Shown: positions 29,536 to 61,272, numbered from the stretch's first letter. The stretch is DNA of 64,000 nucleotides from Lepidodermella squamata (GCA_047495785.1 JBLDXI010000048.1:1215499-1279498); one strand, 5' to 3'. Notes: generated by a model not told the origin, from the sequence alone. Translations and numbers: made by a program.

Positions 29536-31848
29536 ATGACAAAATCAAAGATTTACCTACTTATGTTGCTGAGTTTGGCTGCAAGCATTGCAGCTCAGAA
29601 GCGCTTCAGACTCAGGGTCTTGTCGCTTAACACCTTTGTAGCGAATGACCCAAGCAACAATATGGCCTGCAAAACGGCCCAAAAAATCGTGGTCGATGCT
29701 ATCAATGCAAGAAGTGACATACTGCAAGATTACCATATCGAGCTGCAACACGTTGATGAAGGACGAGGGTCGCCATTTGCTCTAGCGAAAGGTGTCGAGT
29801 TTGCGAGGAGTTTCGATTCAAACGCCTCAGCATTCCAATCACCGGTCAGTATGGGCCCCCTAGCTACGGCTGGATGTGTCGCTTGGGGACAGGCGGCTCA
29901 GTTTGTTAACATGGTGGTCATAGGCAGTTCATGCACGAGCCCAATTCAAACAGCGAGGCGTGACCTGTACTCTACTTTGTACAGAGCAAGGCCACCTGCC
30001 GAGGCATCGATCTACGCCAAATATCAGCTCCTGTTGAAAGTAACGGCGTGGCGTAGGATCGCAATTTTCTGCATCGTGACCACTGTATATCCCGTTCACT
30101 TTCAAATGGCTTCCTTATCTTACTCAATTGCTACGTCTCTAGGCTTCGAAGTTGCGACATTCGAAGGCTACGGGCAACTTAGCGAAGAGAGGTTGGAAGT
30201 GCTCAAGAAAGCCGATATTCGCATCTTCGTTTTTGAGACAACCGATGCTTCCGAAATGGTTGAATTTTTCTGTTTGGCATTCAAGTTCGGGATTAAAGGG
30301 CCCAGGTATTCCTTCTTACTCCAAAGCATCAGTTTTATTGACCCATGGAAATTTGACAAGGAAATGATTCCCAGGAACTGTTCGATAGCTATAATTTTAG
30401 AACAGTTCAAAGAGGCGATTTTCATCGGACCGCCTATTGAGGCAGTCGAAAATCTAACGCGGCCTACTACCCTGGGTCACTCCAGGGCTGAATTTGAGGA
30501 AAGTTTCGGGAATCTGACTGGAAAAGCGCCATTACCTGCCGCTCATTACCGCCATTTGTGCTACGACAGAGCTTTGCATGCCCTAATAGTGCTGAACAAC
30601 ACAGAAACGCGATTGCAGGCTCGAAATATGAGTTTGCGAGACTACAGGGAGTACCCGAGAGAAGTCATGCAAATCACGAATCAGAGTGCGTTGGAAATCG
30701 ACTTTTTCGGAGTTAGACAGGGTCGCTTCCGCTATTCGGACCGCGGCGAGTTGGATTACGACCCACAGTTAGTTACAATTTATTCGGTTGAGCGCAGTGG
30801 TTTGTTGATAACACACCGTTTGACATGCCGCATGAACAGCTCCGCAACCAATGTCAGTTCCTATGATGTCGAAACCCTGACTTCTTCAGATAAGTTCAGG
30901 AAAGCTGACGCAGCGAAGAGTTACAAAATAGCTCAGGATACTACCACATTTTTTGGGTCTATGGTCGGTATATCCTCGGTATTCTTTATTCTTCAAATTT
31001 CTTTAATATACTATCACATAAAGAAATCGCCTTCTTTCGAAGTTTGCTTGAGAAGGTGTTTGCTGTTAGCGTTTTGTATATTGCTTGACCTGACTGTTGT
31101 TGTAGTTTCTTTCCCGGATGCTATTCTTAATAGCGGGGTTTGCCTACTTCAGGATGTGGTAATTGTGATAAGCGTATCTGCGTGCCACGGCTTCTTAGGC
31201 TTCAGATTACTTATCGCACTTGATGTAGTACGGAGAATCAGTATCCAACCCCGAAGCAGAAGTAGATTGAATACGAATGCAACAGGGACCAGGTTTCAAT
31301 CTCAAGATCCTGCTCGAAGTGAGGAAATCAATGGAAAAGAAATCCCAGTTAAGCAACGCTTCCCATCAATGCTTCTATTTGTTATCGTCAACGTAGCTCT
31401 ACTCAGCGGGTGGATGATCAGCGACCATCCTGTTTTAGTCGATGAAGCTCCGCAGCAATTCTATGTGCTGGAAAGAGACGCCTATTTCGAAATAAGACGG
31501 TTAGCCTGTTCAAGCCGGTTAGGAAAATACTGGATCTCATCTTTGGCTGCTCTAAATTTCTTGCCTCTCATCATGGGAATGGCCTCGATTCTACGCATGG
31601 GAGCTGCGGTTAAGCGTTTCAGTGCTGTTCAGGATATGCAGCAATGTAAAATAGCATTGCTAGTCGTGTCTACGCTGTATGCTGGCGCCATTTTCGCCTG
31701 TTTAATATTTCAAACGTATAGCAATCAGACGGCTGTTGCTGCTGTTGTGTCCATGTTAATGTCGATCGCAATAACGTGGATCTTTAATTTTCCAGTTCTA
31801 CGCAATGAAACAACAATCCTTTTTCGCGAAATCATTTTTAAAACTTAG
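29536..31848 (+). CDS. Intronless GABA-B-like class C GPCR, copy 1 (770 aa)
   Basis: Signal peptide; Venus-flytrap domain (INARSDILQDYHIEL, SSCTSP, CYDR); 7 hydrophobic helices with the GABA-B-type W...D.P and CSS...W motifs; no cysteine-rich domain; short tail. Confidence 0.85.
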   Translation: MTKSKIYLLMLLSLAASIAAQKRFRLRVLSLNTFVANDPSNNMACKTAQKIVVDAINARSDILQDYHIELQHVDEGRGSPFALAKGVEFARSFDSNASAFQSPVSMGPLATAGCVAWGQAAQFVNMVVIGSSCTSPIQTARRDLYSTLYRARPPAEASIYAKYQLLLKVTAWRRIAIFCIVTTVYPVHFQMASLSYSIATSLGFEVATFEGYGQLSEERLEVLKKADIRIFVFETTDASEMVEFFCLAFKFGIKGPRYSFLLQSISFIDPWKFDKEMIPRNCSIAIILEQFKEAIFIGPPIEAVENLTRPTTLGHSRAEFEESFGNLTGKAPLPAAHYRHLCYDRALHALIVLNNTETRLQARNMSLRDYREYPREVMQITNQSALEIDFFGVRQGRFRYSDRGELDYDPQLVTIYSVERSGLLITHRLTCRMNSSATNVSSYDVETLTSSDKFRKADAAKSYKIAQDTTTFFGSMVGISSVFFILQISLIYYHIKKSPSFEVCLRRCLLLAFCILLDLTVVVVSFPDAILNSGVCLLQDVVIVISVSACHGFLGFRLLIALDVVRRISIQPRSRSRLNTNATGTRFQSQDPARSEEINGKEIPVKQRFPSMLLFVIVNVALLSGWMISDHPVLVDEAPQQFYVLERDAYFEIRRLACSSRLGKYWISSLAALNFLPLIMGMASILRMGAAVKRFSAVQDMQQCKIALLVVSTLYAGAIFACLIFQTYSNQTAVAAVVSMLMSIAITWIFNFPVLRNETTILFREIIFKT

Positions 31849-33024
31849 TGGGACCCGTGAATTCACAATAATTTTTGATTGATATTTTTGAATGACGCGC
31901 AAAATCCATTGGAAAAATAAATCATTGTGACGCCGAAATTGCGTCTCAAGAAATATCAGAAAATCAAAACTGCAGCAAAACCGGCTCATTTTTCGCCCAC
32001 TGTCCTCATTTACCAAACCATCCTCGAATACAAAAATTCAGCCTGTAAGACATATTCCTGCAGGCTGCTTATTAGATTTTTTCTTGCGACGTCACTATGA
32101 TCACTATTACTTCACGTTCTTTATAATGTTGTATGTAGTTAATAGTCTAATGAAGGGGAGATACCAAATCCAGTGTACGAGGTAGGATCCTCGCTCGAGG
32201 TGGAAGGAAGGGGGGGGCAGTCACAAAGTGGGTCAGTTCAAGGCTGGAGATTCATTATCGCAGAAGGTCAAAGAGCGAACGATCTTTACAACGATAAGTA
32301 CAGTAACATCACAACCTCGATTTCTAATGCTGGTTACTAATGCTAAAATATTCCTTTGTTATAAAGTCATTGACAAATAAAGACGTCCCGAGTTCACGAG
32401 CCGTTGTTACCGTAGCGGAATATTGCAGTGAATAGTTACGACACCTCATATACGTTGTAAATCACTGATTTACCACGTATCCTATAGTGTCGAAGGAAAA
32501 AATGACACATGAACCCCAAACGTCGCGATTAATCCCATTTGATTCAAATTACCAGGGTCCTTTCCCCCCATCTAAACCAGCGGTTCTAAAAATTTGTGGA
32601 GTACGTGTAACAAAAGTGTAACAAAAAAAGGCAATCAAGGGTCTCGCTTGCCAATCCAAATTGTTTAATTTCCAGAGCCATCAGATATTTGCACTTTACT
32701 TCTTTACGTCAAATTCATTCGTCATGCTCTTGTTGGGACATTTTTTACCTTCAAAGTTCAGGACTTTCGTCACAACTCGACTTGTTCTTTATACTCATTG
32801 TCAAAAACATCTGTTTTCCGTTCCGCGAAGCAACAATTTACACACCTGAGAAGGACTAACCCAGACACAGCTGATCCTGAGTGCTTCCTGATAAAGTCAA
32901 TTGATCAATGAGCATGACGCAAGAGATTTACGAGAATTAACGAATACACAGTACACTCCTGGAAAAGGGGCAGGATAGGAGGGGGCGAGGCAGATATGTT
33001 CAGAAGAGACGTAGCATTGAAAAC

Positions 33025-35352
33025 ATGTATAGAACTAAACACTTTGATATGAAGCTCAACATGAATTTTCTTCTTTTGCTTTCAATATCAGTAACATGCT
33101 CAGCGGCATCAAAGCGTCACATGCTTAAAATCTTGTCGCTCAATAGCTTTTTGTCAAATGACGTGAGCAATAACTTGATCTGTAGGACTGCTCAGCAATT
33201 TGTTGTCGATACAGTCAACGCGAGAAGCGACATTTTGCCGGATTACCACGTCGAACTACAACATCTTGACGAAGGTCGTGGAGCGATGTTAGCTCTCGCA
33301 AAAGCCGTCGAGTTTGTTAGGAGCTTCGATACTAACACGTCAGCCTTTCAATCTCCGGTTAGTATGGGCCCTCTTGCAACTGCAGGTTGCGTCTCCTGGG
33401 GGCAGGCCGCTCAGTTCTTCAATATGGTAGTCATAGGCAGTTCATGCACGAGCCCAATTCAAACCGCAAGGCGTGATCTATACTCGACTCTCTACCGAGC
33501 AAGGCCACCTGCCGAGGCATCCCTCTATGCCAAGTATCAGTTCATACTGAAGGTAACGCCATGGCGCAGAATTGCGATTCTCACGGTTGTGAGCCCTGCT
33601 TTTCCTGTTAACCTTCAAACCGCTACAACATCATACTCAATTGCTATATCTCTGGGGTTTGAAGTTGTTAGATTTGAAGGCTATGACGAGTTGAACGAAG
33701 AGAGATTAGAAGTGATGCGAAAAGCTGACATCCGCGTTTTCCTCTTTGAAACAAATGACCCCACCGATCCTGTCATTTTTTTCTGTCTAGCTTACAAAGT
33801 TGGCATCACTGGGTCTAGATATGCTTTCGTGTTCCTTAGTCTCACCTTTAGTGATCCGATGAAACTTGATAAGGCGCTGCTACCAAAGGGTTGTACGATA
33901 TCAATTGTTCTGGATCAGATAAAACAGGCCATTTACATCGGTCCATCTATCGAGGGGGTGGAAAGCCTAACGCAGCCGACTACTCTGGGTCATTTCAGGG
34001 CTGAGTTTGATGAAAAGTTGGCCAATCTTTCTGGAAAGTTGCCTCTTGCTGGTTTTAATTTCCGCCACCTATGCTACGATCGAGCATTACAAACACTACT
34101 AGTTCTCAACAGCACCGAAACGCAATTGCTTGCTCGAAATATGAGTTTACGGGACTACAGGGAGTATCCGAAGGAGGTTATGCGAATCGCGAACCGGAGT
34201 GCACTAGAAATCGACTTCTACGGTGTGAGACAGGGTCGTTTCCACTATTCAGATCGAGGCGAGCTGGACTATGACCCACAACTAATTACTATATACTCGA
34301 TAGAACGCAGCAGTTTGTTGATAACACACCGTTTGACATGCTACCTAAACAGATCGGCAACTGACGCCAGCTCATATGGCGTGGAAAACGTGTTTTCTTC
34401 CTCTATGATGTTCGAAAAAGCTGATGGGGCCAAACGTTACAACCTGACAAAAGATACGTCCACATTTTTCGGGTCTTTAACTGGCATATCTTCTGTATTG
34501 TTAATCATTCAAATTGGTTTGATGTTCTTTCGCCTCAAATCGCGGCAGGCTCTTGAATATACTTGCGGGATTGGCTCAATTTGCATTCTGCTAAATGTTT
34601 CCGCTGTTTTGATCTCCGTCCCTAATGCCAGCCTTTCAGACAGGATTTGTCCAAGTCAAGTAGTCGTAGTGTCGATGAGCATCTGTCTAGCGCACAACTT
34701 CTTGGGTTTCAGACTTCTCTTAGCAGCTGATGTAATAAGGAAGAACGAAGGCACCGGCAAAAAGCGGGAACGTCTACATACAAATTTATCGGGTAAAACG
34801 TTCCGTAGCAATAAATCTCATGATCGCACGAAGGTTCGAGAACTGATAGACGTCAAAGGTCCACCAGTGACGCATCGCTTACCGCTATTGGTCATAATCG
34901 CTTTTGCAAACATTACAGTGATTACTGCCTGGATGACAAGTGACAGTCCCAAGTATATTCCTGAGCCACTGAAGCTTTACTATCTCGAGGATGAAGACAC
35001 CAACGTCGAAGTAACTAGCTTCGCCTGTTCGAGTCGACTAGCCAAATATTGGCTATGCGCATTAATTTTATTGAATTTCCTGCCCCTGGTAATAGGAATT
35101 GTCGCGATTTTACGAATGCGAGGAGCAATCTTGCGTTTCAACCGTGCACATAATTTACAACAGTGCAAATTATCTCTGCTTGCGGTCTCGACGTTGTATG
35201 CTGGCGCCATTCCAATAGTGTTTATGGTTCACGCTTATAGCGACCAGGCAGCAATTGTAGCAGTTGCTTTGATTTTGATGTCTACAATTGTCACGGCAGT
35301 TTTCAACCTTTCAGCGGTTCACAAGGTTCGCGAGGCTATGGTTAACTTGTGA
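33025..35352 (+). CDS. Intronless GABA-B-like class C GPCR, copy 2 (775 aa; start could instead be 33049 or 33061)
   Basis: Paralog of copy 1 with the same VFT + 7TM architecture. Confidence 0.85.
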   Translation: MYRTKHFDMKLNMNFLLLLSISVTCSAASKRHMLKILSLNSFLSNDVSNNLICRTAQQFVVDTVNARSDILPDYHVELQHLDEGRGAMLALAKAVEFVRSFDTNTSAFQSPVSMGPLATAGCVSWGQAAQFFNMVVIGSSCTSPIQTARRDLYSTLYRARPPAEASLYAKYQFILKVTPWRRIAILTVVSPAFPVNLQTATTSYSIAISLGFEVVRFEGYDELNEERLEVMRKADIRVFLFETNDPTDPVIFFCLAYKVGITGSRYAFVFLSLTFSDPMKLDKALLPKGCTISIVLDQIKQAIYIGPSIEGVESLTQPTTLGHFRAEFDEKLANLSGKLPLAGFNFRHLCYDRALQTLLVLNSTETQLLARNMSLRDYREYPKEVMRIANRSALEIDFYGVRQGRFHYSDRGELDYDPQLITIYSIERSSLLITHRLTCYLNRSATDASSYGVENVFSSSMMFEKADGAKRYNLTKDTSTFFGSLTGISSVLLIIQIGLMFFRLKSRQALEYTCGIGSICILLNVSAVLISVPNASLSDRICPSQVVVVSMSICLAHNFLGFRLLLAADVIRKNEGTGKKRERLHTNLSGKTFRSNKSHDRTKVRELIDVKGPPVTHRLPLLVIIAFANITVITAWMTSDSPKYIPEPLKLYYLEDEDTNVEVTSFACSSRLAKYWLCALILLNFLPLVIGIVAILRMRGAILRFNRAHNLQQCKLSLLAVSTLYAGAIPIVFMVHAYSDQAAIVAVALILMSTIVTAVFNLSAVHKVREAMVNL

Positions 35353-40056: not shown

Positions 40057-41759
40057 CTGACACGATTGTTATTTTTAGCAAGAACGTCCTACTTATATTC
40101 TGTCTAACGGAAGACAGACAAGCGGAGAAAAATATGTTGTTGTATTACGTTCTTTTAAGTACTTAGGAATGAGGCCGATTTAAGCGTCATTTCGGAAAGC
40201 GGAAGGAATTGATGAAAAGCCGTGGAAATTCGGTGGCTGTCCGTAGCAAGCCGTGGAAAACGAAGGAAAACGCGCGGTTTCAATTGTGTGCGCGAGCGGT
40301 TGCGCAACCAAAACGCGGCTAAAAGCCGTGGAAAGCGCGAGTGAGTGCGTGGAATTGTGTGCGCTATAACCACGGGCAGGAGAAAAGTCGATTTCGACGT
40401 TTTCCGCGTCGTTTTAAATACAATGGCGCACTGAGAACAATAGCGGGTCATTGTTGAGTCGTTTGCCTGTCACCGTGATTTGTTTTACACCGAATTTTAG
40501 CATTTTTTATTCCGAATTAGTAAATTCGATCAGACTTATTGAACGCGTCGCGTTATTTCGAGTATAGCAATATAAAAATTGCTTGAATTATCCTCATTTT
40601 TCGTGTTTCTGTCACTTCTATCAGGCGGCCGTTGTTAAAACAAAATTACCTTCATTTAAATGCTAATTTCCGATTTTCGCCGTGTTTAAAAGCATGAACC
40701 CAGTAGATTTTTACTTTCGACACCTGCGGCTGCTGGCTTATCAAGGGCGCGCGTAATAAACACTGACGTGTTATATTATCGCGGCTCAGCTTTTCACTGC
40801 TGTTCACAAATCTTGAGCGAAAACGATGAAAAAACGAACGACGCGGTCACTCAGCTCAATGTTTAATAAAAAATCAGAGAAGCGCATTAACAAAACACCG
40901 TCGGATTTACAATGATTTTAAAAATCGCTATCATAACAGCCATACAAAATAATAATTGCGTAATCATAAATCAATCACTATCCGCATCTGCAGATTCATC
41001 AAACCGGCTGCTCTTCGTAGCAACAGAAATTTTAACCGAGCCACCCTGTCGTTTGGCGGCTTTTTTGTCAACGCGACTATAGTGGTTGCCAGCCAACTCG
41101 CGCAAACGGGCGCATAGCACGTCTTGCATGTCAGTGCCATATATTTTACAGACATGCGTGATCAGCTTCGGATTGGCGGTTGAGTGCAAGAAGGCTTTTG
41201 CGTCGGCAGCGCTAGATGAAAAAAAATAAAAATAATAGTAACAAATTTATTAAAAAAAATAGGGAAACTACAAACTTTTCTAAATTCATCTAATTTTCGC
41301 TCATTTTAATCAACATTTAAATACTCACTTGTTGTTGACGAGACGCAGAATTATTGCGGCGGCGTCACGCAAACGGATGTGTTGATGCGTGAACGAGGGC
41401 GAAAACGAGGTGGTAAAGCGACGAGAGTGGGTTTACCTCTCCGTTTCAGCCGGGTTGTGTCAGCGTCACATCTCCTCACCACGCCCTCGACAAGATAACG
41501 ATCGGTTCCAAAATTCTAAAAACTTTTAAATTTTTAAGGCGGCGCGGTTTAAAAATTGGGTGTCGGTAATAAAAATTAAGAAAAATTTGGGGATGAATCA
41601 CTTTATTAGCCGTTTTAGGTATTTTTATTTGCTACTTGTCTTCAACTTTTTATTTCCACCGCGTTTTATTACCGAATTTTCGATTCGCTAGTGATCAGAT
41701 TTATTTAAAACGCATCTTTGAAATTTCTGATGTCTTTCGTATTATAGTCATTTTACGTA

Positions 41760-44597: not shown

Positions 44598-44876
44598 TTT
44601 ACTATTTCAAGTTGAGTATTTGCAAGCGGCCGGTTTTTTTCTGAAAATACGGATATATTGTATTGAAAAATCGGAAATCGGATAACAAATTTTATACTGT
44701 TAGATTCGTAATAAAGAGGCGCATTCGATGAAAATGTTGTTTAATTCGTAAAATATTTTGGGATATCAAGGAATGGGCGGAAACGGAAATAAAAATGATG
44801 CGTAAAACACTACAATGACCCGCTATTGTTCTCAGTGCGCCATTGTATTTAAAACGACGCGGAAAACGTCGTTATA

Positions 44877-51223: not shown

Positions 51224-53560
51224 ATGAAGATCACTATGATTTTGCTCTCATACTTCGTCGCAGGAGTATTGACATCAAAGCGCCATATGCTAAGAGTTTT
51301 GTCGCTAAACTCATTTGTACCGAACGATTCGAGCAACAATTTGGTCTGCAGGGCTGCTCAACAAATTGTCGTCGATGCTGTTAACGCAAGAAGTGATATT
51401 TTGCCAGATTACCACGTTGAATTGCGGCATCTCGAAGAAGGAAGAGGTTCGCTGTTTGCTCTAGCTAGAGGTGTCGAGTTCGTCCGGAGCTTCGATGTAA
51501 ACACCTCAGCCTATCAATCACCGGCTGGTATGGGCCCGATTGCTACATCAGGCTGTGTCTCATGGGGACAGGCGGCTCAGTTCTTCAATATGGTAGTCAT
51601 TGGCAGCTCGTGCTCGAGTCCTATTCAGACAGCAAGGCGGGATCTTTACTCTACTCTATACCGGGCAAGAGCTCCAGCTGAGGCGTCGCTCTATGCGAGA
51701 TATCAGTTCATTCTAAAAGTAACCCCGTGGCGTAGGATCGCGATTCTCACACTTGTGAGCATAGTCTATCCCATCAACCTTCAAACAGCAACGCTATCAT
51801 ACTCAATAGCTACGTCTTTGGGTTTTGAAGTCGTGAGATTCGAAGGCTACGAAGAGCTGAACGAAGAGAAAATAGAAGTGCTGAAAAAGGAGGACATTCG
51901 CGTCTTCTTTTTCGAGACAGCCGATCCTCAGGATGCGCTTAACTTCTTTTGCCTTGCATTCAGACTCGGAATCAAAGGGCCCAGATATGCTTATGTATTT
52001 CAAGGCATTAGCTACACTGACCCGTCAAAAATAGATAAGGAAATACCTGCAAACTGCTCGATAACTGTTATCTTAGAACAGTTTGAAGAGGCGATTTTTA
52101 TTGGTGCTTCTATCGAGGGAGTCAATAGACTACAACAGTTGACATCCTTGGGCCACTCAAGGGCAGAATTCGAACAATGGTTTGACGACAGAACTGGTAA
52201 GGTCCCGCTGCCTCGCTACGAATATCGCCACTTGTGCTATGATTTGGCTCTGCAAGCACTGCTAGTGCTCAACAACACAGAAACTCGATTACAGGCTCGA
52301 AATATGACTTTGCGAGACTACAGGGAGCAACCGAGAGAGGTAATGCGAATCGCGAACAGCAGCGCGCTGGAAATCGACTTCTACGGCGTTCGGCAGGGAC
52401 ATTTCCAATATTCCAGCCGAGGTGAGTTAGATTATGACCCGCAATGGGTTAGCGTCTATTCAGTTGAACGCCGTCGCCTGTTAATCACTCACCGGTTGGT
52501 ATGTCGTTACAACAGTTCGGCCACCAATGTCAGCTCATACGACGTGGAAACTACTGAAACCTCTTTCAAGTTCCAAAAAGCTGATGCGGCGAAACTGCAT
52601 ATCATCGCAAAGGATACAACAGCCTTTTATGGCTCGATACTTGGAATCTCTGGCATTTTGCTTCTAGTGCAAGTCGGTCTAATTTACAATTTTATGAAAG
52701 CTTCTCATAATTTTGATTATTCAATGCGACGATGCTCGCTTATCGCAGCTTGCATTTTACTAAATATATCAGCGGTTCTGGTCTCGATTCCGAATTCTAG
52801 CCTGGATAGTTGGATTTGCCAGCTACAAGCTATCGCAGTGACAATAAGTATCGGCATCGTCAATAATATGTTAGGCTTTAGACTTTTGATAGCTGATGAC
52901 TTCATTCGACATTGCCAAATGTTAAAACCGAAACGAGAACGAATGCATACGGCTGCCTCAGCCACAACTTTCAATAGCAACAAGTCGCCAAAAGCAGCAA
53001 TTCGTGATCCAGCAAAAAGTGAAGATCTCGACAACAAAGGCCTTCCGATGAAGCATCGCTTTCCGCTGATGTTATCCGTCGCTGCGATTAACCTCGTCTT
53101 GATTATTAGCTGGTTTGTAAGTGATCGTCCTGGGGTTTTCAGTGAGTCAGCCAAGCTTTATTATATGGACGAAAAAGATACCCGCATCAAGATAACGAGT
53201 TTCACCTGCTCGAGCCAGTTCGCTGGATATTGGCTAGGCGCTGTAGCTTCACTCAACGCTGTGCCTCTGATAGTGGGATTATTCCTTATTATAAGAATGC
53301 AAAGTTCTCTGAAACGCTTCAATCCGGTACAAGATATGGCGCAGTGTAAAGTATCCTTGTTCGCCGTCTTCACGCTTTATGCAGCCGCTATTGCCACTGT
53401 GTTGTTGTTTAATGCTTATAGCGATCAGGCAGCAATAGCAGCTGTTGTTTTGATTTTAATGTCCATGATCGTAAGTGCAATATTCAATTTTGCTCTGTTT
53501 CGCAAGGCTCGAGTGGAAACTGTCGCACTCACGATGAGATCACTCGGCGTCAAGAAGTGA
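51224..53560 (+). CDS. Intronless GABA-B-like class C GPCR, copy 5 (paralog of copy 3)
   Basis: ATG at 51224 aligns with the copy 3 start (MKI...); full VFT + 7TM. Confidence 0.85.
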   Translation: MKITMILLSYFVAGVLTSKRHMLRVLSLNSFVPNDSSNNLVCRAAQQIVVDAVNARSDILPDYHVELRHLEEGRGSLFALARGVEFVRSFDVNTSAYQSPAGMGPIATSGCVSWGQAAQFFNMVVIGSSCSSPIQTARRDLYSTLYRARAPAEASLYARYQFILKVTPWRRIAILTLVSIVYPINLQTATLSYSIATSLGFEVVRFEGYEELNEEKIEVLKKEDIRVFFFETADPQDALNFFCLAFRLGIKGPRYAYVFQGISYTDPSKIDKEIPANCSITVILEQFEEAIFIGASIEGVNRLQQLTSLGHSRAEFEQWFDDRTGKVPLPRYEYRHLCYDLALQALLVLNNTETRLQARNMTLRDYREQPREVMRIANSSALEIDFYGVRQGHFQYSSRGELDYDPQWVSVYSVERRRLLITHRLVCRYNSSATNVSSYDVETTETSFKFQKADAAKLHIIAKDTTAFYGSILGISGILLLVQVGLIYNFMKASHNFDYSMRRCSLIAACILLNISAVLVSIPNSSLDSWICQLQAIAVTISIGIVNNMLGFRLLIADDFIRHCQMLKPKRERMHTAASATTFNSNKSPKAAIRDPAKSEDLDNKGLPMKHRFPLMLSVAAINLVLIISWFVSDRPGVFSESAKLYYMDEKDTRIKITSFTCSSQFAGYWLGAVASLNAVPLIVGLFLIIRMQSSLKRFNPVQDMAQCKVSLFAVFTLYAAAIATVLLFNAYSDQAAIAAVVLILMSMIVSAIFNFALFRKARVETVALTMRSLGVKK

Positions 53561-54751: not shown

Positions 54752-56992
54752 ATGCAGAAAACTTTTTTATCAGTATATTTTATACTCAATGTGACAGCAG
54801 CGAAAAATTTCTCTTTGAGAATCCTCTCACTCAATGCATTCACCGGCTACGAACCCCGTGATAACTTGCTGTGCAAAGCTGCTCAGCAAATGGTTGTCGA
54901 TGTTGTTAACAAGCGTAGTGACATTCTACGCGATTATCATGTGGTTATGGACTATCAAGATGAAGGACCTTCTGGGATGTTTTCTCTATCAAAAGCCGTA
55001 AATTTTGTCAGAAAATCTGAGGAAAGCGATGACTTCTTGCAAGCCCCCATCAGCATGGGCCCTTTCTTTACTCCAGGCTGTATCTCCTGGGGTGCGACAG
55101 CAGTATTCTTCAATACTGTTGTGATATCAAGTTCATGCACAAGCCCCTTGCAAACTGCGAGGAAGGATCGATTCCCGACATTCTATAGGACAAGATCACC
55201 GATTGAACTGTCACTTAACTCGAAGTTCAAGTTTCTCATGCAGGTGACACACTGGAGAAAAATTGGCATTTTCACTGTTTTGGCCTCAAACCCTTACAAC
55301 CTTCAATCAGCGACATTATCTTATTCGATAGCATCTTCCTTGGGATTCAACATCGTGAAATTTGAAGGTTTCATTGATATCACCGATGAGAAAATGGCAG
55401 AGCTCAAACACGCTGGCATTAGAATTTTCATCTTAGAATCGGCTGATCCTACAATTGTGAATCTTTTCCTCTGTCAAGCTTACAAATTCGGAATTCACGG
55501 GAGAAAATACGTTTTCATCTTTCAGATCTTTGGCTATGTTCACCCGTATACCGCCGAAATTCCTGCTAAATGCTCCCTACAAATTTTACTCGACCAATTG
55601 TATTCTTCTTTTTTCTTCGGTTCGCCATATGAAGGCTTCAGAATGACAGGGGTAACCAGCCTCGGTCATTCCATGTTGGATTTCGAGAAGGAATTCGATT
55701 CGATAACAAATCACTCGAGAACAGCAGATTATGACTTTCGGCACATGTGCTACGACCGAACACTCCAGACTTTGCTGATACTTAACAAAACGGAACAAAT
55801 ATTGAGGAGCCGAGGCATGTCCCTACGTGATTACAAAATTAGTCCTCGAGAAGTTATGCTTGCCACTAATCAAAGTGCCGCAGAGATAGATTTCTTCAAT
55901 TTGAGACATGGAAGATTTTACTACTCACCTCGAGGAGAATTCGATTACGAACCGCAAGTTGTCGCCATGTTCCATCTTGATAGAGGTGGTCTTCACTACA
56001 CCCACCGTATGACGTTTCGAGGGAATCTATCTGTTATTGAGGTCTTTGAAAATTCAAGCATATTTCTTGTCCACGATGAGGCTAAATACATAGAATGGTC
56101 AGTAGATAACTCGGAAATTTCTGCCACGGTGGCCTGTATCATAGGCCTTCTTACTGGGCTTGAGATGAGCCTTATCCTGTATGTGAAGTTCGTCACCAAG
56201 ACTTTGAGAGTTTTTCTGAGGAAAACTATCCCTTTAATGATATGCCTATTCCTAAATGCGTCCGCCATACTCTTAGTCACTCCCAACAGAGCCCTGACTG
56301 CCGATGTCTGTTGCATGCAGATTGCTAGTCTGGGATTTGCGTTGCTCTTAGCCTACAGCTTCATATCGCTAAAACTTCTTTCGGCTTGCGAGTTCGTACG
56401 AAGCATCCCTCATGTTGCAATTGTTCATCAGGGCTGGAGGAAGCATGTCATAGGGGTGATTCGGAGATTTCCAACTGATTCTATTCCCTCTAAGCACCAG
56501 ATCCCTATTTTAACAATTATTGGATTCGCAAATCTGCTAACCATTATTGCATGGTTTTCAGTGGAAAAACCCAGGGCTCAAAAAATTATCGAAACACCAA
56601 ACCCAATTTATGATGGTGATAGCGATACTTACATTACTGTGACCAGTTTGACTTGTTACAGGGAGAACTTCGCGGTTTGGGCTGGAATTCTAGCATTCAT
56701 CGATTTTTTACCACTCAGCCTTGGAATCATAGCAATGCTGCTCATGGGGCGAAGGATTAGGAGTTTAAATCGATCAAAAGATGTCCTTCACTCGAAAATA
56801 GCCCTCATAACAATGGTAACGCTGTACTTTGGAGGAACAGCGGCTGTGTTTACGTTGAAATCCTATACGGCACGAACAACTGCTGTAGCCGTGTCTCTTA
56901 TCTTGTTATCAGTTACTCTGGCCATGATTTTCGACCATACTATCTTAAGAGTTATCCTTAAACGTATTGTCCACATTTCTAAGAAGCGATGA
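54752..56992 (+). CDS. Intronless GABA-B-like class C GPCR, copy 6 (746 aa)
   Basis: VFT + 7TM; second subfamily (AFTGYEPRDN, GPFFTPGC). Confidence 0.85.
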   Translation: MQKTFLSVYFILNVTAAKNFSLRILSLNAFTGYEPRDNLLCKAAQQMVVDVVNKRSDILRDYHVVMDYQDEGPSGMFSLSKAVNFVRKSEESDDFLQAPISMGPFFTPGCISWGATAVFFNTVVISSSCTSPLQTARKDRFPTFYRTRSPIELSLNSKFKFLMQVTHWRKIGIFTVLASNPYNLQSATLSYSIASSLGFNIVKFEGFIDITDEKMAELKHAGIRIFILESADPTIVNLFLCQAYKFGIHGRKYVFIFQIFGYVHPYTAEIPAKCSLQILLDQLYSSFFFGSPYEGFRMTGVTSLGHSMLDFEKEFDSITNHSRTADYDFRHMCYDRTLQTLLILNKTEQILRSRGMSLRDYKISPREVMLATNQSAAEIDFFNLRHGRFYYSPRGEFDYEPQVVAMFHLDRGGLHYTHRMTFRGNLSVIEVFENSSIFLVHDEAKYIEWSVDNSEISATVACIIGLLTGLEMSLILYVKFVTKTLRVFLRKTIPLMICLFLNASAILLVTPNRALTADVCCMQIASLGFALLLAYSFISLKLLSACEFVRSIPHVAIVHQGWRKHVIGVIRRFPTDSIPSKHQIPILTIIGFANLLTIIAWFSVEKPRAQKIIETPNPIYDGDSDTYITVTSLTCYRENFAVWAGILAFIDFLPLSLGIIAMLLMGRRIRSLNRSKDVLHSKIALITMVTLYFGGTAAVFTLKSYTARTTAVAVSLILLSVTLAMIFDHTILRVILKRIVHISKKR

Positions 56993-57320: not shown

Positions 57321-59606
57321 ATGCTTTCCTTTATCTTGCAAGCGTTACTTTTGCCCTGTCTAATCGATGCAAAGCGCGATGTACTTAGAGTCCTTTCCCT
57401 CAATGCCTTCACTGGTTACGAACCTCGTGATAACATGCTATGTAAAGCTGCACAGCAAATGGTCGTTGATATCGTCAATAACCGGAGTGACATTCTACTC
57501 GATTACCTAGTTGAGCTGGACTACCAAGATGAAGGAGCTGCTTCAACGCTGGCTTTGGCTAGAAGCATTGAGTTCACGAGACGATCAGAGCAAAGGGATG
57601 ATTATGTTCAATCGCCGGTCAGCATGGGTCCGTTTTTCACCCCCGGCTGCTTTGCATGGGGTTCCTCAGCTCAATATTTCGACATGGTGACAATAGGCAG
57701 TGCTTGCACCAGCCCAATTCAAACGGCTAGGCGAGACCGATATCCGAATCTTTACAGAACACGGGGCCCAGTTGAATTATCTATCCAGGCGAAATACAAC
57801 TTCTTGCTACAGTCTACATTGTGGAGGAGGATAGGCATTTTCACCAATGTTAATCTCAACCCATTCAACCTACAAATCGCTACTTTTTCGTATTCAATTG
57901 CTGCTTCTCTTGGATTTGAAATAATTAAATTCGAGGGATTTCCAGAAATTACCGACGAACGAATGAAGGATTTAACGGATGCTGACATTCGAATATTCAA
58001 CTTTGAAACATCCGATCCAACTGCTGCGTATACATTCCTTTGCCAAGCCTACAAGTTCGGAATAACTGGATCAAAATACGTCTTTATTTTTCAGTTTCAA
58101 AGCTATGTCCATCCTCGCATGGTGGACAAAGAACTCCCAAAGGATTGCTCAAAGTTCATTTTGATGCAGCAGCTTGACGTTTCTATCTTCATTGGGTCAT
58201 CGTATGAGGCTTTGTTCAAAACTCCCAGTACAACAAGTTTAGGACACACGCGAGCGGATTTTGAGGCGAAATTTGATCTCATAACTAACGGTTCACGAGC
58301 GGCAGATTACGATTTCCGGCACATGTGCTACGATAGAGCCCTTCAAACGATGTTGATCCTGAACGATACTGAAGCAAGGTTGAAATCACGGAATATGACC
58401 TTGAAAAACTACCGAAGCTTCCCACATGAGGTCATGATTATTGCAAATCAAAGTGCATTTGAAATTCAATATTTCAACTTGAGACAAGGCTTGTTTCGTT
58501 ACTCGCCAAGAGGGGAATTGGATAACGAGGCTCAGATAGTCGCTAGGTTCTCCCGTCAAGAAAACGGTCTTCAGGTTATTCACCGAATTCTGTCAAGGCA
58601 GGAAAACAGCAGTCGCTTGTACACAATTGAAACCCTTCAGAACTTGAGCATATTTTCAGTTAGAGCTGAGGCATATTTCGCCGAAGCTGAAATGAACACC
58701 ATGCCAATCGCTGCTTCATTTTACTCGGTTGGAGCAATTCTGATGTTGATGAATATATCCATCATGGTTCACACGAAGATTTCTACCAGATGTAGGCAGG
58801 TGCTGATGCGAAAAAGTATGATCAGTACGGTTTGCATCTTCTTGAATGTCTCCGCATTTCTTCTCGTAACCCCAAATGAATTTCTCTCTGATTCTATTTG
58901 CTCCACCCAAATGGTTCTACTCGATCTTGCGATTTATTTTGCACACAGTTTCGTCGGATTGAGGTTACTAGCTGCATCAGATTACATTAAGAAGAAATCG
59001 AAAATCAAATCAAATAAGCAGAGCTGGAATAGAAAAGTTGGAGAAGTTGTAAGAACATTTTCGAACAACAACGACATTGTGAGACGCATTTCAGCTGACA
59101 ACATCTCAGCTAAAAGGAAACTACCCTTCATTCTAGTCTTTGGTATACTTAATTTACTGACTATGATAGCATGGCTTTCTGTGAATTCGCCGACGTCTCG
59201 CCGCATTGTTCCTTCTTCTAAAGTGTATCTGAGCGACATCGATACTTACGTTACTTACTCAAGCCGAGCTTGTGACTCTGAGAATTTCATAGTATGGGCT
59301 GGGGTGCTATCATTCATCAATTTAGTCCCTTTGATTCTCGGAATTTTGGCCATATTACGCATGGGTTCGAAGATAAAACAGTTGGAACGATCTCCCGATG
59401 TCAATCACAGCAAAATTGCCCTGATAGTGATGGTGAGTCTGTATTTCGGGGCTATCGCAGCTGTCTTCACGATGACATCATTCACGGCCCAGACAACAGC
59501 TATTGCGTTGGCGCTTCTAGTACTCTCGACTTCTGTAACACTGATTTTCAACCACGTCGTAGCAATATCGCTACTCAAACGCATGAAGAAAGTGATAACT
59601 CGTTGA
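57321..59606 (+). CDS. Intronless GABA-B-like class C GPCR, copy 7 (761 aa)
   Basis: Paralog of copy 6; VFT + 7TM. Confidence 0.85.
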   Translation: MLSFILQALLLPCLIDAKRDVLRVLSLNAFTGYEPRDNMLCKAAQQMVVDIVNNRSDILLDYLVELDYQDEGAASTLALARSIEFTRRSEQRDDYVQSPVSMGPFFTPGCFAWGSSAQYFDMVTIGSACTSPIQTARRDRYPNLYRTRGPVELSIQAKYNFLLQSTLWRRIGIFTNVNLNPFNLQIATFSYSIAASLGFEIIKFEGFPEITDERMKDLTDADIRIFNFETSDPTAAYTFLCQAYKFGITGSKYVFIFQFQSYVHPRMVDKELPKDCSKFILMQQLDVSIFIGSSYEALFKTPSTTSLGHTRADFEAKFDLITNGSRAADYDFRHMCYDRALQTMLILNDTEARLKSRNMTLKNYRSFPHEVMIIANQSAFEIQYFNLRQGLFRYSPRGELDNEAQIVARFSRQENGLQVIHRILSRQENSSRLYTIETLQNLSIFSVRAEAYFAEAEMNTMPIAASFYSVGAILMLMNISIMVHTKISTRCRQVLMRKSMISTVCIFLNVSAFLLVTPNEFLSDSICSTQMVLLDLAIYFAHSFVGLRLLAASDYIKKKSKIKSNKQSWNRKVGEVVRTFSNNNDIVRRISADNISAKRKLPFILVFGILNLLTMIAWLSVNSPTSRRIVPSSKVYLSDIDTYVTYSSRACDSENFIVWAGVLSFINLVPLILGILAILRMGSKIKQLERSPDVNHSKIALIVMVSLYFGAIAAVFTMTSFTAQTTAIALALLVLSTSVTLIFNHVVAISLLKRMKKVITR

Positions 59607-60057: not shown

Positions 60058-61272
60058 ATGAAGCCATTCTTCTGTCTCTTCATATCTGTCCTCGTCAACT
60101 TGGCCTGTTTGTGCGAATCGCAAGTAACAACAACCAAAAATAAGACGCTATCGGATCGTCTCAAGACGCGTTTCTCTGAGCTATGCCCAGCAGTTCGTTC
60201 TAAGGACCTCCCCATCGAGACGATCAGGCAAAATCGCTTGTCAAACATCTCAAACGAAACTTTTATTACTGTTCGAGTTGGCCTGTCGTTATTTCGATTC
60301 ATTGAGATCAGCGACGTAGAAAGGCGGCTGTCTGTTCTGGGCGAGATGCGATTCTACTGGAAATATCCGTGCCCAGAATTAACTTGTCCTGATCTTTTGG
60401 AGGGGAATGACCTAGTGATGTGTAACGTCTCCGAGCTGTATTTTGGCGCGGATACTCAAGGATACTGGTACCCTCATCCCACCCATATCAATTCCCACAT
60501 TTTGCCTCGCCTATCATCGGATGAAATAGCTTCGCTGCCTATGCGAATTTACCCGTTGAATAACGAGGGGTACCTGTCACACCTGAGACGATTCGATTCC
60601 ATGTGCAAATCGTTCCAATTCAACCTATTTCCCTTCGATATTTTGAATTGTTCCATCACTATGGACACTGAAAGCCCTCTCATTATGTACGAACCATTTT
60701 CAATGTTTGTCGACAAAAGCACAACTGCTAACTACATGCGAGACGTTGAGATCTGGCAGCTGGTTAGGTTGGCGCCGAGGAGGGAGATGGTCACCGTTTG
60801 GGACAGCAACATTCCTGTGAGCCGTATTTACTTTTCAATGGTTTACAGGAGGAAAGCGTTTTTCTACGTCTGCAATACATTTTTACCCACTTTTCTGCTT
60901 TTCATCGTGCAAATAGTGTCGCTCATCGTGGAACCAACGTCAGGTGAACGGTCTAGCATTTGCATGGCTGTGATGCTAGCTTACACAGTCATTCTAACGA
61001 TGATCTACGACCAGATACCGAGAACTTCAGAGCCTGTCTATCTGATTTACATGGTCATTACAAAGTTCGCGATTGGAGTTGGTATTGAAGTTTACATGCT
61101 TATTGTCTGGCAGCTAAAAACAATTTCTCCTTCATTGCGAAGGGGTAAATTGATCGAAAGTTGTCGAAGATTATCAGGAGTGCGAATTGCGGACCTTGTA
61201 GTTGCTTCACTATCGATAATAACTGTCCTAGTTTCGGATGTTGCCTACTTCTGTCTAATGATGAGCGGCTGA
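60058..61272 (+). CDS. Intronless divergent Cys-loop ligand-gated ion channel subunit, nAChR-like and cation-type (404 aa)
   Basis: Signal peptide; Cys-loop CKSFQFNLFPFDILNC; pre-M1 RRKAFFYVCNTFLP; M2 SGERSSICMAVMLAY; IPRTS; 4 TM helices. Confidence 0.9.
   Translation: MKPFFCLFISVLVNLACLCESQVTTTKNKTLSDRLKTRFSELCPAVRSKDLPIETIRQNRLSNISNETFITVRVGLSLFRFIEISDVERRLSVLGEMRFYWKYPCPELTCPDLLEGNDLVMCNVSELYFGADTQGYWYPHPTHINSHILPRLSSDEIASLPMRIYPLNNEGYLSHLRRFDSMCKSFQFNLFPFDILNCSITMDTESPLIMYEPFSMFVDKSTTANYMRDVEIWQLVRLAPRREMVTVWDSNIPVSRIYFSMVYRRKAFFYVCNTFLPTFLLFIVQIVSLIVEPTSGERSSICMAVMLAYTVILTMIYDQIPRTSEPVYLIYMVITKFAIGVGIEVYMLIVWQLKTISPSLRRGKLIESCRRLSGVRIADLVVASLSIITVLVSDVAYFCLMMSG

What the first reader, a model, noticed from the sequence alone, without database searches (positions are those of the whole stretch)
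29536..61272. Intronless receptor island: tandem GABA-B-derived GPCR array plus a divergent Cys-loop channel, a candidate undescribed chemosensory system
Seen: seven co-oriented, single-exon VFT+7TM receptors, an eighth remnant and a single-exon Cys-loop subunit within about 32 kb, while the neighbouring genes have introns. The array contains frameshifted, truncated and remnant copies and TE insertions. Known: canonical GABA-B receptors are low-copy, multi-exon and have long coiled-coil C-tails, whereas intronless tandem arrays with birth-and-death turnover are typical of chemoreceptor families. Here the C-tails are only about 10-25 aa. Inference: a lineage-specific chemoreceptor family evolved from the GABA-B branch of class C, rather than from the CaSR/T1R/V2R branch.
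Basis: partly seen in the sequence, partly recalled or inferred. Interest (0 to 1): 0.85.

Follow-up and report, generated by a model that had tools for sequence, protein, structure and literature searches.

The report
Tandem orphan GABA-B-like receptor genes
Seven neighbouring intron-free genes encode orphan receptors of a large, unnamed family built like the GABA-B neurotransmitter receptor but unable to bind GABA its way; a smell or taste role is plausible but untested, and the ion-channel gene next door is probably there by chance.

Summary
The array is real. Seven co-oriented, uninterrupted ORFs (29.5-59.6 kb) encode a Venus-flytrap domain plus a 7TM domain, with 15-25 aa C-tails. A complete 404-aa Cys-loop subunit gene follows. 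Six receptor copies are probably intact: the G3 "frameshift" is contradicted by read-derived contigs. One copy (G5) is 5'-truncated. No eighth remnant exists. A 7.9-kb composite transposon splits the array.

A family profile aligns end to end with GABA-B1 (E 3e-71; mGluR only 1e-5). The fold matches GABA-B, with no Cys-rich domain. The GABA-contact residues and the coiled coil are lost. The genome has a separate canonical GABA-B1. The seven copies form one clade inside a genome-wide family of at least about 150 copies, whose only outside relatives are unnamed metagenome proteins.

Against the simple chemoreceptor picture, the flytrap is more conserved than the 7TM, and no RNA data exist.

The "island" link with the Cys-loop gene is not supported. 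The genome holds about 1,700 Cys-loop signature hits (one per 70 kb), and paralogous loci do not share the adjacency.

The scan has already reported this receptor family on several other contigs of this genome.

The parts
29536..31848 (+). G1: intact 770-aa GABA-B-like class C GPCR (signal peptide, VFT, 7TM, 20-aa tail)
   Evidence: ORF. ANF_receptor 5e-10. Family profile positions 1-752. TM segments and tail. 76% identical to G5.
33025..35352 (+). G2: intact 775-aa family member
   Evidence: 58-61% identical to G1, G3 and G6.
37706..40056 (+). G3: family member. The assembly shows a frame break near 39819 (ORF ends at 39916, TM6-7 continue in another frame at 39799-40011). It is probably intact in reality.
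   Evidence: Frame break. Read-derived contigs carry an extra G behind 39819 at depth 101/101. With that base the ORF is 783 aa and 84.5% identical to G6 over 770 aa.
40146..48019 (.). Composite transposon of about 7.9 kb bounded by inverted arms of about 300 nt (40146-40459 and 47748-48019, 94-96% complementary). It separates G3 from G5.
   Evidence: Inverted repeats I3, I4 and I12. Internal segments recur together on C7:2.20-2.23 Mb, C32:175-183 kb and C42:4.217 Mb at 83-93% identity.
41760..42626 (+). 288-aa ORF inside the transposon with '(E/D)RPxYE'-type short repeats. It has no Pfam family and is not a receptor remnant.
   Evidence: Translation. No Pfam match. The segment is repeated on C7, C32 and C1 at 83-89% identity. 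No family-profile hit.
44807..47767 (.). Nested foldback-type repeat with inverted arms of about 730 nt
   Evidence: Arms 44807-45563 and 47073-47767. About 10 near-full copies at 86-91% identity elsewhere in the genome.
48517..50412 (+). G5: 5'-truncated copy (631 aa). It lacks the signal peptide and about 139 residues of lobe 1, so it is a likely pseudogene or truncated gene.
   Evidence: Starts at profile position 140. Stops in the upstream frame. No N-terminal fragment found by tblastn or HMM. Omega against G1 is 0.14 (VFT) and 0.39 (7TM).
51224..53560 (+). G6: intact 778-aa family member (ATG at 51224; an upstream TTG at 51200 opens the ORF)
   Evidence: 84% identical to G3. dS falls from about 0.7-1.1 to 0.03-0.2 in the 3' half, which indicates gene conversion.
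54752..56992 (+). G7: intact 746-aa family member
   Evidence: 52% identical to G8.
57321..59606 (+). G8: intact 761-aa family member, used as the reference copy
   Evidence: AF2 model with mean pLDDT 83.5: VFT, then 7 helices and an ECL2 hairpin. Foldseek top 27 hits are all GABA-B, TM-score up to 0.66/0.73. PDB phmmer finds GB1 at 1.6e-8.
60058..61272 (+). Complete 404-aa Cys-loop (pentameric ligand-gated channel) subunit in one ORF. It is adjacent to the array but not shown to be functionally linked to it.
   Evidence: Neur_chan_memb 1.3e-6. PDB finds 5-HT3A at 7e-15. C-x14-C loop with FPFD, M2 'SGER' and Leu 9', M3-M4 loop of about 25 aa. AF2 and Foldseek match 5-HT3A/nAChR over the full length, TM-score 0.53-0.64.

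Best explanation
This is a locally duplicated tandem array of seven genes: six probably intact and one 5'-truncated. They belong to a large, fast-evolving, lineage-restricted clade of GABA-B-type class C GPCRs in an unidentified small invertebrate.

SHOWN. Each gene is one uninterrupted ORF encoding a signal peptide, a GB1-like Venus-flytrap domain joined directly to a 7TM domain, and a 15-25 aa tail. The copies have lost the residues by which GB1 binds GABA, and they lack the coiled coil that pairs GB1 with GB2. They keep the TM3-ECL2 cysteines and the TM3/TM6 ionic-lock pair. They are under purifying selection. The array grew by local duplication, including a block duplication (G1~G5, G3~G6) and gene conversion between G3 and G6. 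It was later split by a 7.9-kb transposon.

INFERRED. The proteins act as dimeric, ligand-gated GPCRs for ligands other than GABA. Sensing of external chemicals is the most likely use for such a large, tandemly duplicating, intron-free repertoire. The adjacent Cys-loop gene belongs to an even larger independent expansion and sits there by chance.
For: Architecture and branch. ANF_receptor hits. The family profile aligns from the VFT to TM7 of GB1 at 3e-71, with GB2 8e-49, GPR156 3e-9 and mGluR 1e-5. AF2 pLDDT is 83.5, and the Foldseek top 27 are all GABA-B at TM-score up to 0.73, against about 0.38 for mGluR/CaSR/T1R. Paralogues pass the Pfam 7tm_3 cut-off.

Not GB1/GB2 orthologues. The GABA-site positions are replaced: W65->D/E, S130->V/I/F, H170->R, Y250 and W278 variable, E349->F/Y. 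Tails are 15-24 aa. A canonical GB1 elsewhere (L033) matches fly GB1 at 7e-92 and keeps Y250, W278, E349 and the coiled coil. In the tree the window's 7 copies form a clade (100), the 24 own-genome members form a clade (100), and a 60-row clade (98) holds only unnamed metagenome proteins besides; all named GB1, GB2 and GB-like proteins lie on the other side.

Size. All 59 scored candidates hit at E<1e-86. The family motif occurs 156 times against 9 in the control.

Selection. Omega is 0.10-0.25 overall. Basic 3.50 is kept in 7/7 copies and acidic 6.35 in 5/6.

Chance adjacency. There are 1,736 FPFD-x3-C hits against 14 in the control, one per 70 kb. None of 11 Cys-loop paralogue loci and none of about 30 GPCR paralogue loci show the other family within 1.5 kb.
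Against: (1) No expression or ligand data exist, and no RNA run holds the locus. (2) The flytrap is more conserved than the 7TM, and the GB1-equivalent pocket positions are not enriched for variability, with a mean percentile of about 0.4. So the classic signature of a diversifying orthosteric pocket is missing. (3) The TM7 P-K motif lysine is lost in every copy that reaches that position, so G-protein coupling is not assured. (4) The pseudogene fraction is low: 1 of 7 here, and about 10% of the top genome hits carry stops. That is modest turnover for a chemoreceptor family. (5) The tree has no outgroup, so 'derived from within GABA-B' cannot be told apart from 'sister to GB1+GB2'.
Confidence: 0.6

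Rival explanations
1. The receptors detect internal rather than external signals. Candidates are diversified neuropeptides, secreted cysteine-rich proteins or metabolites, with the receptors acting as neuromodulatory, developmental or immune/microbe-sensing receptors.
For: The conserved flytrap (entropy 1.78 against 2.53 for the 7TM; omega 0.10-0.16) suggests a shared ligand class. The pseudogene fraction is low. An earlier scan note describes arrays of this family interleaved with secreted Cys-rich protein genes (s1-374123). Mollusc nAChR expansions were linked to stress and immune responses rather than to smell (PMC6896357).
Against: At least 150 divergent copies in tandem arrays is far more than known endogenous-ligand class C families have. 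Nothing here shows co-evolving ligand genes: no secreted-protein genes lie inside this array.
Confidence: 0.2
2. The proteins are GB1-like ligand-binding or auxiliary subunits that cannot signal alone. They would need a common GB2-like (co-receptor) partner, like T1R3 or insect Orco.
For: The profile is much closer to GB1 (244 bits) than to GB2 (170 bits). The TM7 lysine is lost in all copies, and the 7TM is under weaker constraint, with omega 0.24-0.58.
Against: There is no coiled coil for GB1/GB2-type pairing. The ionic-lock residues are kept. No candidate common partner was identified. The homodimer prediction gave no verdict.
Confidence: 0.1
3. The GPCR array and the Cys-loop gene form one functionally linked receptor island: a co-regulated or co-acting metabotropic plus ionotropic chemosensory system.
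For: The genes have the same orientation with only a 451-bp gap. Three further adjacent Cys-loop/class C pairs appear in the hit lists: C30:1479043/1480627, C50:111431/112957 and C30:634275/629852. An earlier first-reader note reports an interleaved array elsewhere (s1-374006).
Against: One Cys-loop gene per 70 kb predicts about 0.46 such genes per 32-kb array by chance, so P is about 0.37. None of the 11 closest Cys-loop paralogue loci has a GPCR neighbour, and none of about 30 GPCR loci has a Cys-loop neighbour. In the lists, 4 of 106 Cys-loop hits lie within 10 kb of a listed GPCR, against about 3.5% expected. The upstream regions share no sequence.
Confidence: 0.05
4. The copies are neutral or decaying products of runaway duplication, with no maintained function.
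For: One copy is truncated, and a transposon lies inside the array.
Against: Six long ORFs of 746-783 aa are intact. Omega is 0.10-0.25 with dS up to about 2. The structural cysteines and motifs are conserved.
Confidence: 0.03

Closest known systems
Metabotropic GABA-B receptor subunits GB1/GB2 (class C GPCR)
   Same: Same domain order: the VFT is joined directly to the 7TM with no Cys-rich domain. The profile alignment runs end to end (GB1 3e-71, GB2 8e-49). The fold matches at TM-score up to 0.73. The TM3/TM6 ionic-lock pair is kept.
   Different: GABA-contact residues are replaced. There is no coiled-coil tail. The TM7 lysine is lost. There are at least about 150 intron-free tandem copies instead of 2-3 multi-exon genes. 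The clade is separate from canonical GB1, which this genome also has.
Lineage-specific GABA-B-like expansions in sponges, and short 'GABA-B subunit 1-like/2-like' orphans of corals, hemichordates, molluscs and nemerteans
   Same: These are extra GABA-B-type receptors beyond GB1/GB2, often with diverged binding pockets (Tethya genome preprint, doi 10.1101/120998). Named examples of about 750-800 aa turned up as hits here.
   Different: The preprint counts 9 mGABARs in Tethya and 46 across four demosponges; here the count is at least about 150. In the tree the named orphans group with GB1/GB2, not with this clade, whose only outside relatives are unnamed metagenome proteins.
Vertebrate class C chemoreceptors (V2R, OlfC, T1R) of the CaSR branch
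   Same: Class C VFT+7TM receptors expanded in tandem arrays and used for chemical sensing (my own knowledge of the field).
   Different: They come from a different branch, they have a Cys-rich domain, and they are multi-exon. By my recollection (not checked here), their extracellular domain is the more variable part, whereas here the 7TM varies more than the VFT. A sensory role is unproven here.
Expanded intron-free nAChR-type Cys-loop genes of molluscs, and octopus chemotactile receptors
   Same: The neighbouring 404-aa gene is a cation-type Cys-loop subunit in one exon from a tandemly expanded family. Molluscs show intron-free tandem nAChR expansions (PMC6896357). Octopus uses nAChR-like receptors for contact chemosensation (doi 10.1101/2025.03.03.641191).
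   Different: The scale differs: about 1,700 signature hits here against a published maximum of 217. The loop is C-x14-C, the M3-M4 loop is only about 25 aa, and there are no vicinal loop-C cysteines. No close relatives were found by the word-indexed search.

Membership tests
Class C GPCR | N-terminal Venus-flytrap (periplasmic-binding-protein type I / ANF_receptor) domain | tested here: met
   PF01094 at E 5e-9 to 2e-13 in six ORFs, and weak (0.07) in the truncated one. The AF2 model shows a bilobed alpha/beta fold.
Class C GPCR | 7TM domain of the 7tm_3 type | tested here: met
   The window copies miss PF00003 even at E<=10. However, the family profile aligns across TM1-TM7 of GB1, Foldseek matches the full length, and paralogues of the same clade pass the 7tm_3 cut-off, e.g. 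C29:1790393 at 65 bits.
GABA-B branch of class C | VFT joined to the 7TM without a cysteine-rich domain, and closest similarity to GB1/GB2 rather than mGluR/CaSR/T1R | tested here: met
   The VFT ends at about residue 440 and TM1 starts at about 460. GB1 scores 3e-71 against mGluR 1e-5. Foldseek gives 0.55-0.73 against about 0.38.
GABA-B receptor proper (GB1/GB2 orthologue) | GB1 GABA-contact residues (GB1b W65, S130, S153, H170, Y250, W278, E349) | tested here: not met
   Every one is replaced in every window copy, except for a conservative S153->T/S. The genome's canonical GB1 exon keeps Y250, W278 and E349.
GABA-B receptor proper (GB1/GB2 orthologue) | C-terminal coiled coil mediating GB1-GB2 pairing | tested here: not met
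   Tails are 15-25 aa. L033 has a stretch aligning to the fly GB1 coiled coil. The PF18455 genome search was uninformative.
GABA-B receptor proper (GB1/GB2 orthologue) | Groups with GB1 or GB2 in a tree | tested here: not met
   FastTree of 162 rows: the family plus 35 unnamed metagenome proteins form a clade with support 98 that excludes all named GB1, GB2 and GB-like proteins and the genome's own GB1. The tree is unrooted.
Chemoreceptor gene family (operational definition) | Large lineage-specific repertoire in tandem arrays with gene gain and loss | tested here: met
   At least about 150 copies. Arrays occur on many contigs. The window's copies form one clade. There is one truncated copy here, and about 10% of the top hits carry stops.
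Chemoreceptor gene family (operational definition) | Diversification concentrated in the ligand-binding part | tested here: inconclusive
   The VFT is more conserved than the 7TM. Of the GB1-equivalent pocket positions, only the two lobe-2 sites are highly variable, at the 78th and 90th percentile. No site-model test was possible.
Chemoreceptor gene family (operational definition) | Expression in sensory cells and response to external chemicals | not testable with these tools
   No RNA run holds the locus, and no functional data exist.
Cys-loop receptor (pentameric ligand-gated ion channel) | Extracellular beta-sandwich with the disulfide loop (FPFD), plus four TM helices with a pore-lining M2 | tested here: met
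   C183-x14-C198 with FPFD is conserved in 12 paralogues. M2 carries 'SGER' and Leu 9'. PDB finds 5-HT3A at 7e-15. Foldseek matches 5-HT3A/nAChR over 385-425 columns. The model is of moderate quality, pLDDT 65.

The most novel reading that the evidence does not exclude
This GABA-B-derived clade, together with the roughly 1,700-member intron-free Cys-loop family of the same genome, is the main chemosensory repertoire of a poorly sampled invertebrate lineage. It would be a second, independent invention of class C chemoreceptors, from the GABA-B branch. Specificity would be diversified mainly in the 7TM or allosteric part rather than in the flytrap.
Probability: 0.3. Interest if true: 0.8.

Novelty: new variant of a known kind. 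Interest (0 to 1): 0.5.

Why it matters
All established class C chemoreceptors (V2R, OlfC, T1R) come from the CaSR/mGluR side of the family. A repertoire of at least 150 genes built from the GABA-B side would be an independent route to chemoreception. This one lacks the GABA site and the coiled coil, has no named relatives in sequenced animals, and varies more in its 7TM than in its flytrap. It would also be a natural library of GABA-B-type scaffolds with new ligand and coupling properties.

The same genome's roughly 1,700 Cys-loop signature hits would be about eight times the largest published expansion of that superfamily.

For this particular locus the practical message is more sober. It is one of many such arrays. 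One reported pseudogene is probably an assembly error. The GPCR-channel neighbourhood should not be read as a system.

Tried and rejected
1. The search for homologous proteins (word-indexed) found nothing for G8 or for the Cys-loop ORF. This is uninformative, because the exhaustive profile search found 2,787 relatives.

2. The Pfam 7tm_3 scan of the window's 7TM halves gave no hit even at E<=10. The profile, fold and paralogue evidence supersedes it.

I used the 1.5-kb flanks of loci already held, plus the coordinate lists, instead.

4. The eighth remnant was searched for by tblastn and by a --max profile search of all frames. It was not found.

5. The search for the GB2 coiled-coil family PF18455 in the genome found nothing, and the controls did not ring either, so it is uninformative.

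6. Identifying the organism failed. Run and organism names are coded. Arthropod R&R cuticle proteins (PF00379) and nematode cuticle collagen N-terminal domains (PF01484) gave no hits. The nearest relatives are unnamed ENA metagenome proteins. A words search of the scan's notes gave nothing. My first guess, the sponge Tethya, was rejected: it has nine mGABARs and no ionotropic GABA receptors.

7. Complex prediction on two copies of the G8 flytrap gave no verdict (score 0.01). This is not evidence either way.

8. Upstream 400-nt regions of the eight genes were compared for shared control elements. No similarity was found at E<=1e-3.

9. PMC5620054 was checked for class C or Cys-loop expansion data. 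Nothing relevant was found.

11. Multi-exon genes (the neurexin-like neighbour and the canonical GB1) were searched exon by exon, by reference, and never joined.

12. The single-base read-through of G3 was done only inside a script, to check frames.

Full report
OBSERVATION. The region holds seven long, co-oriented, uninterrupted ORFs on the + strand. I call them G1, G2, G3, G5, G6, G7 and G8 (there is no G4). Their coordinates are 29536-31848, 33025-35352, 37706-39916, 48517-50412, 51200/51224-53560, 54752-56992 and 57321-59606. A 404-aa ORF follows at 60058-61272, and a 439-aa ORF at 61589-62908.

Six of the seven reach Pfam ANF_receptor at E 5e-9 to 2e-13. The 404-aa ORF reaches Neur_chan_memb, and the 439-aa ORF reaches Metallophos. 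Hydropathy shows a block of TM segments in the C-terminal 300 residues, with only 15-24 residues after the last one. The upstream neighbour (about 7.9-16.6 kb) consists of separate Laminin_G/EGF ORF fragments, so it is a multi-exon neurexin-like gene. Earlier notes of the scan agree. I searched its exons one by one, by reference, and never joined them.

CORRECTIONS TO THE OBSERVATION.

(i) There is no eighth remnant. Neither tblastn with all copies nor a --max profile search of every frame of the window finds anything beyond the seven ORFs and G3's displaced tail. The best other hit has iE 0.016.

(ii) G3's frameshift is in the assembly: its ORF stops at 39916, and TM6-7 continue in another frame at 39799-40011. 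However, contigs built from a public read set carry one extra G behind 39819, at depth 101 of 101. That is exactly the break point. With that base G3 becomes a 783-aa ORF ending at 40056, 84.5% identical to G6 over 770 residues (done in a script only). That run may be the sample the assembly came from, so this points to an assembly or consensus error or an allele. It is not independent proof.

(iii) G5 is truly 5'-truncated. It starts at profile position 140, and the upstream frame is full of stops.

(iv) The 8.5-kb gap between G3 and G5 is one composite transposon. Inverted arms of about 300 nt lie at 40146-40459 and 47748-48019 (94-96% complementary). A nested foldback-type element lies at 44807-47767, with arms of about 730 nt and about ten copies elsewhere in the genome. 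Other internal pieces recur together on three other contigs. The 288-aa ORF at 41760-42626 belongs to this element and is not a receptor fragment.

WHAT THE RECEPTORS ARE. A profile of 19 family members (alignment A1) aligns from the start of the flytrap to the end of TM7 of human GABA-B1 at E 3e-71. GABA-B2 follows at 8e-49 and GPR156 at 3e-9. Metabotropic glutamate receptors reach only 1e-5, on the 7TM alone, and T1R3 reaches 5e-4.

An AlphaFold2 model of G8 is confident (mean pLDDT 83.5). It shows a bilobed flytrap followed directly by seven helices with a beta-hairpin ECL2. Its 27 best Foldseek matches in the PDB are all GABA-B chains, with TM-score up to 0.66/0.73. mGluR, CaSR and T1R come after, at about 0.38. 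There is no room for a cysteine-rich domain.

The window's copies miss Pfam 7tm_3, but paralogues of the same clade pass its cut-off. Placement on the GABA-B branch of class C is therefore well supported.

NOT GABA-B RECEPTORS PROPER. I mapped the GABA-contact residues of GB1 through the profile alignment. In every window copy they are replaced: W65->D/E, S130->V/I/F, G151->S/A, H170->R (invariant), Y250 and W278 variable, and E349->F/Y. Only S153->T/S is conservative. The tails are too short for a coiled coil.

The genome has a conventional GABA-B1 elsewhere (C21, locus L033). Its 773-aa 3' exon matches Drosophila GB1 at 7e-92, keeps Y250, W278 and E349, and has a stretch that aligns to the fly coiled coil. 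The flytrap of this gene begins in an upstream exon.

In a 162-row tree the seven window copies form one clade (support 100). All 24 sampled members from this genome form one clade (100). That clade sits in a 60-row clade (98) whose other members are 35 unnamed proteins from ENA metagenome assemblies. Every named protein lies on the other side. These are Xenopus and Haliotis GB1, Pogona GB2, the genome's own GB1, and GB-like proteins of Nematostella, Montipora, Glandiceps, Ptychodera, Lineus, Gigantopelta, Ciona, Macrostomum, Didymodactylos and Mesorhabditis.

The tree has no outgroup. So 'sister to GB1+GB2' and 'derived within them' cannot be told apart. The metagenome relatives lie on compact eukaryotic contigs beside ordinary animal genes, as single copies.

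SIZE AND DYNAMICS. With G8 as query, all 59 scored candidates in the genome hit at E<1e-86, out of 1,408 first-look candidates. A family-specific motif, F-x-Y-S-x-R-x-E-x-D, is absent from the canonical GB1. It occurs 156 times against 9 for the reversed control. So there are at least about 150 copies in 121 Mb. This is a lower bound, because divergent subfamilies lack the exact motif.

Within the window, G1~G5 (76% identity) and G3~G6 (84%) indicate a block duplication. G7~G8 are older (52%). Between G3 and G6, dS falls from about 0.7-1.1 in the 5' half to 0.03-0.2 in the 3' half, which is a gene-conversion signature.

Selection is purifying: omega is 0.10-0.25 overall.

Unexpectedly, the flytrap is more conserved than the 7TM:
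- Pairwise identity is 69% against 41% for G1-G2, and 47% against 25% for the G1-G6 group against G7/G8.
- Column entropy is 1.78 against 2.53.
- Omega is 0.10-0.16 against 0.24-0.58.

The GB1-equivalent pocket positions are not enriched for variability. Only the two lobe-2 sites are highly variable.

In the 7TM the basic residue at 3.50 is kept in all seven copies, and the acidic residue at 6.35 in five of the six that reach it. The lysine of the TM7 P-K motif is lost in every copy that reaches that position. The canonical GB1 keeps all three.

THE CYS-LOOP GENE. The 404-aa ORF is a complete subunit:
- a signal peptide;
- a C-x14-C loop with FPFD, conserved in 12 paralogues;
- an M2 with a 5-HT3A-like 'SGER' start and Leu 9';
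- four TM helices;
- an M3-M4 loop of only about 25 residues.

Its best PDB matches are 5-HT3A (7e-15) and nAChR subunits. A moderate-quality AF2 model (pLDDT 65) superposes on them over nearly its full length. Cation selectivity is my inference from the M2 motif.

IS THERE AN 'ISLAND'? The Cys-loop family is itself enormous. All 103 scored candidates hit, nearly all as uninterrupted ORFs of about 400 aa, with a giant array on C30. The signature FPFD-x3-C occurs 1,736 times against 14 for the control. That is one per 70 kb.

A 32-kb array is thus expected to touch about 0.46 such genes by chance. The Poisson P(>=1) is about 0.37 if they were evenly spread.

The eleven closest paralogues of the window's Cys-loop gene (42-60% identity, on C16, C7, C32 and C38) have no GPCR fragment within 1.5 kb, and five have another Cys-loop gene there. 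About 30 GPCR paralogue loci outside this array have no Cys-loop neighbour.

In the hit lists, 4 of 106 Cys-loop places lie within 10 kb of a listed class C place. About 3.5% is expected from roughly 210 listed places. This count was made by hand on incomplete lists. The upstream regions of the eight genes share no sequence. On present evidence the adjacency is coincidental.

MECHANISM.

Shown: the genes encode GB1-like flytrap-7TM proteins under purifying selection. The GPCR disulfide cysteines and the ionic-lock pair are intact. The GABA site and the coiled coil are gone.

Inferred from what is established for class C receptors: they act as dimers in which flytrap closure on a ligand rearranges the 7TM pair and activates a G protein. 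The ligand is not GABA bound in the GB1 manner.

The scale, the tandem growth, the intron-free structure and the lineage restriction make environmental chemical sensing the most likely use. I put this at about 45-50% within an overall 0.6 for the whole statement. Endogenous or immune signalling comes next, followed by a GB1-like 'needs a partner' model.

The conserved flytrap and fast 7TM could mean any of three things: a shared ligand class with diversified coupling, specificity residing in the 7TM allosteric pocket, or weak constraint on a non-coupling 7TM. None of these was testable here. No RNA run holds the locus, and the homodimer prediction gave no verdict.

COMPARISON AND NOVELTY. Extra GABA-B-type receptors are known in sponges: nine in Tethya and 46 across four demosponges (doi 10.1101/120998). 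Short GB-like orphans exist in corals, hemichordates, molluscs and nemerteans.

This clade is distinct from all of them in the tree, is far larger, and is known outside this genome only from metagenomes.

The scan has already reported the same family on several other contigs of this genome. Follow-up agents reached similar conclusions: a real expansion, a lost GABA site, and an untested sensory role. One also noted a conserved flytrap with divergent 7TMs. So this locus is one more array of a family that is a new variant of a known kind.

This report adds five things:
- the tree placement;
- the separate canonical GB1;
- the copy-number bounds;
- the correction of G3 and of the 'remnant';
- the chance explanation of the Cys-loop neighbour.

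The roughly 1,700 Cys-loop signature hits are about eight times the published maximum of 217 nAChR genes in the pearl oyster (PMC6896357). That is the most surprising thing seen in passing.

ORGANISM. It remains unidentified. It has a neurexin-like gene, a canonical GB1 and Cys-loop receptors. It has no detectable arthropod R&R cuticle proteins or nematode cuticle collagens. Its genome is 121 Mb in 151 contigs.

Noticed in passing
whole genome (G000); example array C30:0.85-1.21 Mb; window 60058-61272: The Cys-loop signature FPFD-x3-C occurs 1,736 times against 14 for the reversed control, in 121 Mb. All 103 scored candidates of the window's Cys-loop ORF are hits, mostly uninterrupted ORFs of about 400 aa. 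That is about eight times the largest published Cys-loop expansion (217 nAChRs in the pearl oyster, PMC6896357).
   Followed up: partly
window 61589-62908 (+): A 439-aa single-ORF metallophosphoesterase lies just downstream of the Cys-loop gene. All its named relatives are bacterial (Paenibacillus, Cystobacter, Flagellimonas, Terriglobia, Bradyrhizobium) at about 31-37% identity over about 55% of its length. It also has an N-terminal extension of about 175 aa with no match. It is a candidate horizontally acquired gene.
   Followed up: partly
L033 = G000:C21:344644-348504 (ORF 592-2913 +): This is the canonical GABA-B1 orthologue of the genome. Its 773-aa 3' exon matches fly GB1 at 7e-92, keeps the GABA-site residues Y250, W278 and E349 and the TM7 P-K motif, and has a coiled-coil stretch. 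Its closest relative (57% identity) is an unnamed metagenome protein, P0042.
   Followed up: partly
window 37706-40056 vs 51224-53560: G3 and G6 show dS of about 0.7-1.1 in the first 360 alignment columns, but 0.03-0.2 from there to the end. This is the signature of recent gene conversion, or a partial re-duplication, of the 3' half.
   Followed up: partly
window 39819: Assembly and read-derived contigs disagree by one base: there is an extra G in the contigs, at depth 101/101. This creates an apparent frameshift in G3. Other apparent pseudogenes in this assembly may have the same cause.
   Followed up: yes
window 43306-43847: A perfect tandem duplication of a 271-nt unit (99-100% identity) lies inside the composite transposon.
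   Followed up: no
G000:C30:1479043-1481478 and G000:C50:111431-113811: Two loci each have a Cys-loop ORF (+) followed within about 450 bp by a 7tm_3 hit (-) in a 410-aa open frame. They have the same layout and almost identical spacing, so they may be a segmental duplicate or haplotig pair.
   Followed up: no
L055 (ENA ERZ23486764 scaffold_2621), L056, L057 (ENA ERZ27332993 and ERZ27333047): Environmental metagenome assemblies contain compact eukaryotic contigs carrying single members of this receptor clade. The neighbours are ordinary animal genes: an activin-receptor kinase, ankyrin/SOCS-box genes, TAF1-like pieces and glycosyltransferases. An unsampled relative of this animal is therefore present in those samples.
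   Followed up: partly
window 7885-16552 (+): A multi-exon neurexin-like gene (at least five Laminin_G-bearing ORF fragments with EGF domains between them) lies upstream of the array. Earlier scan notes discuss its microexons.
   Followed up: partly
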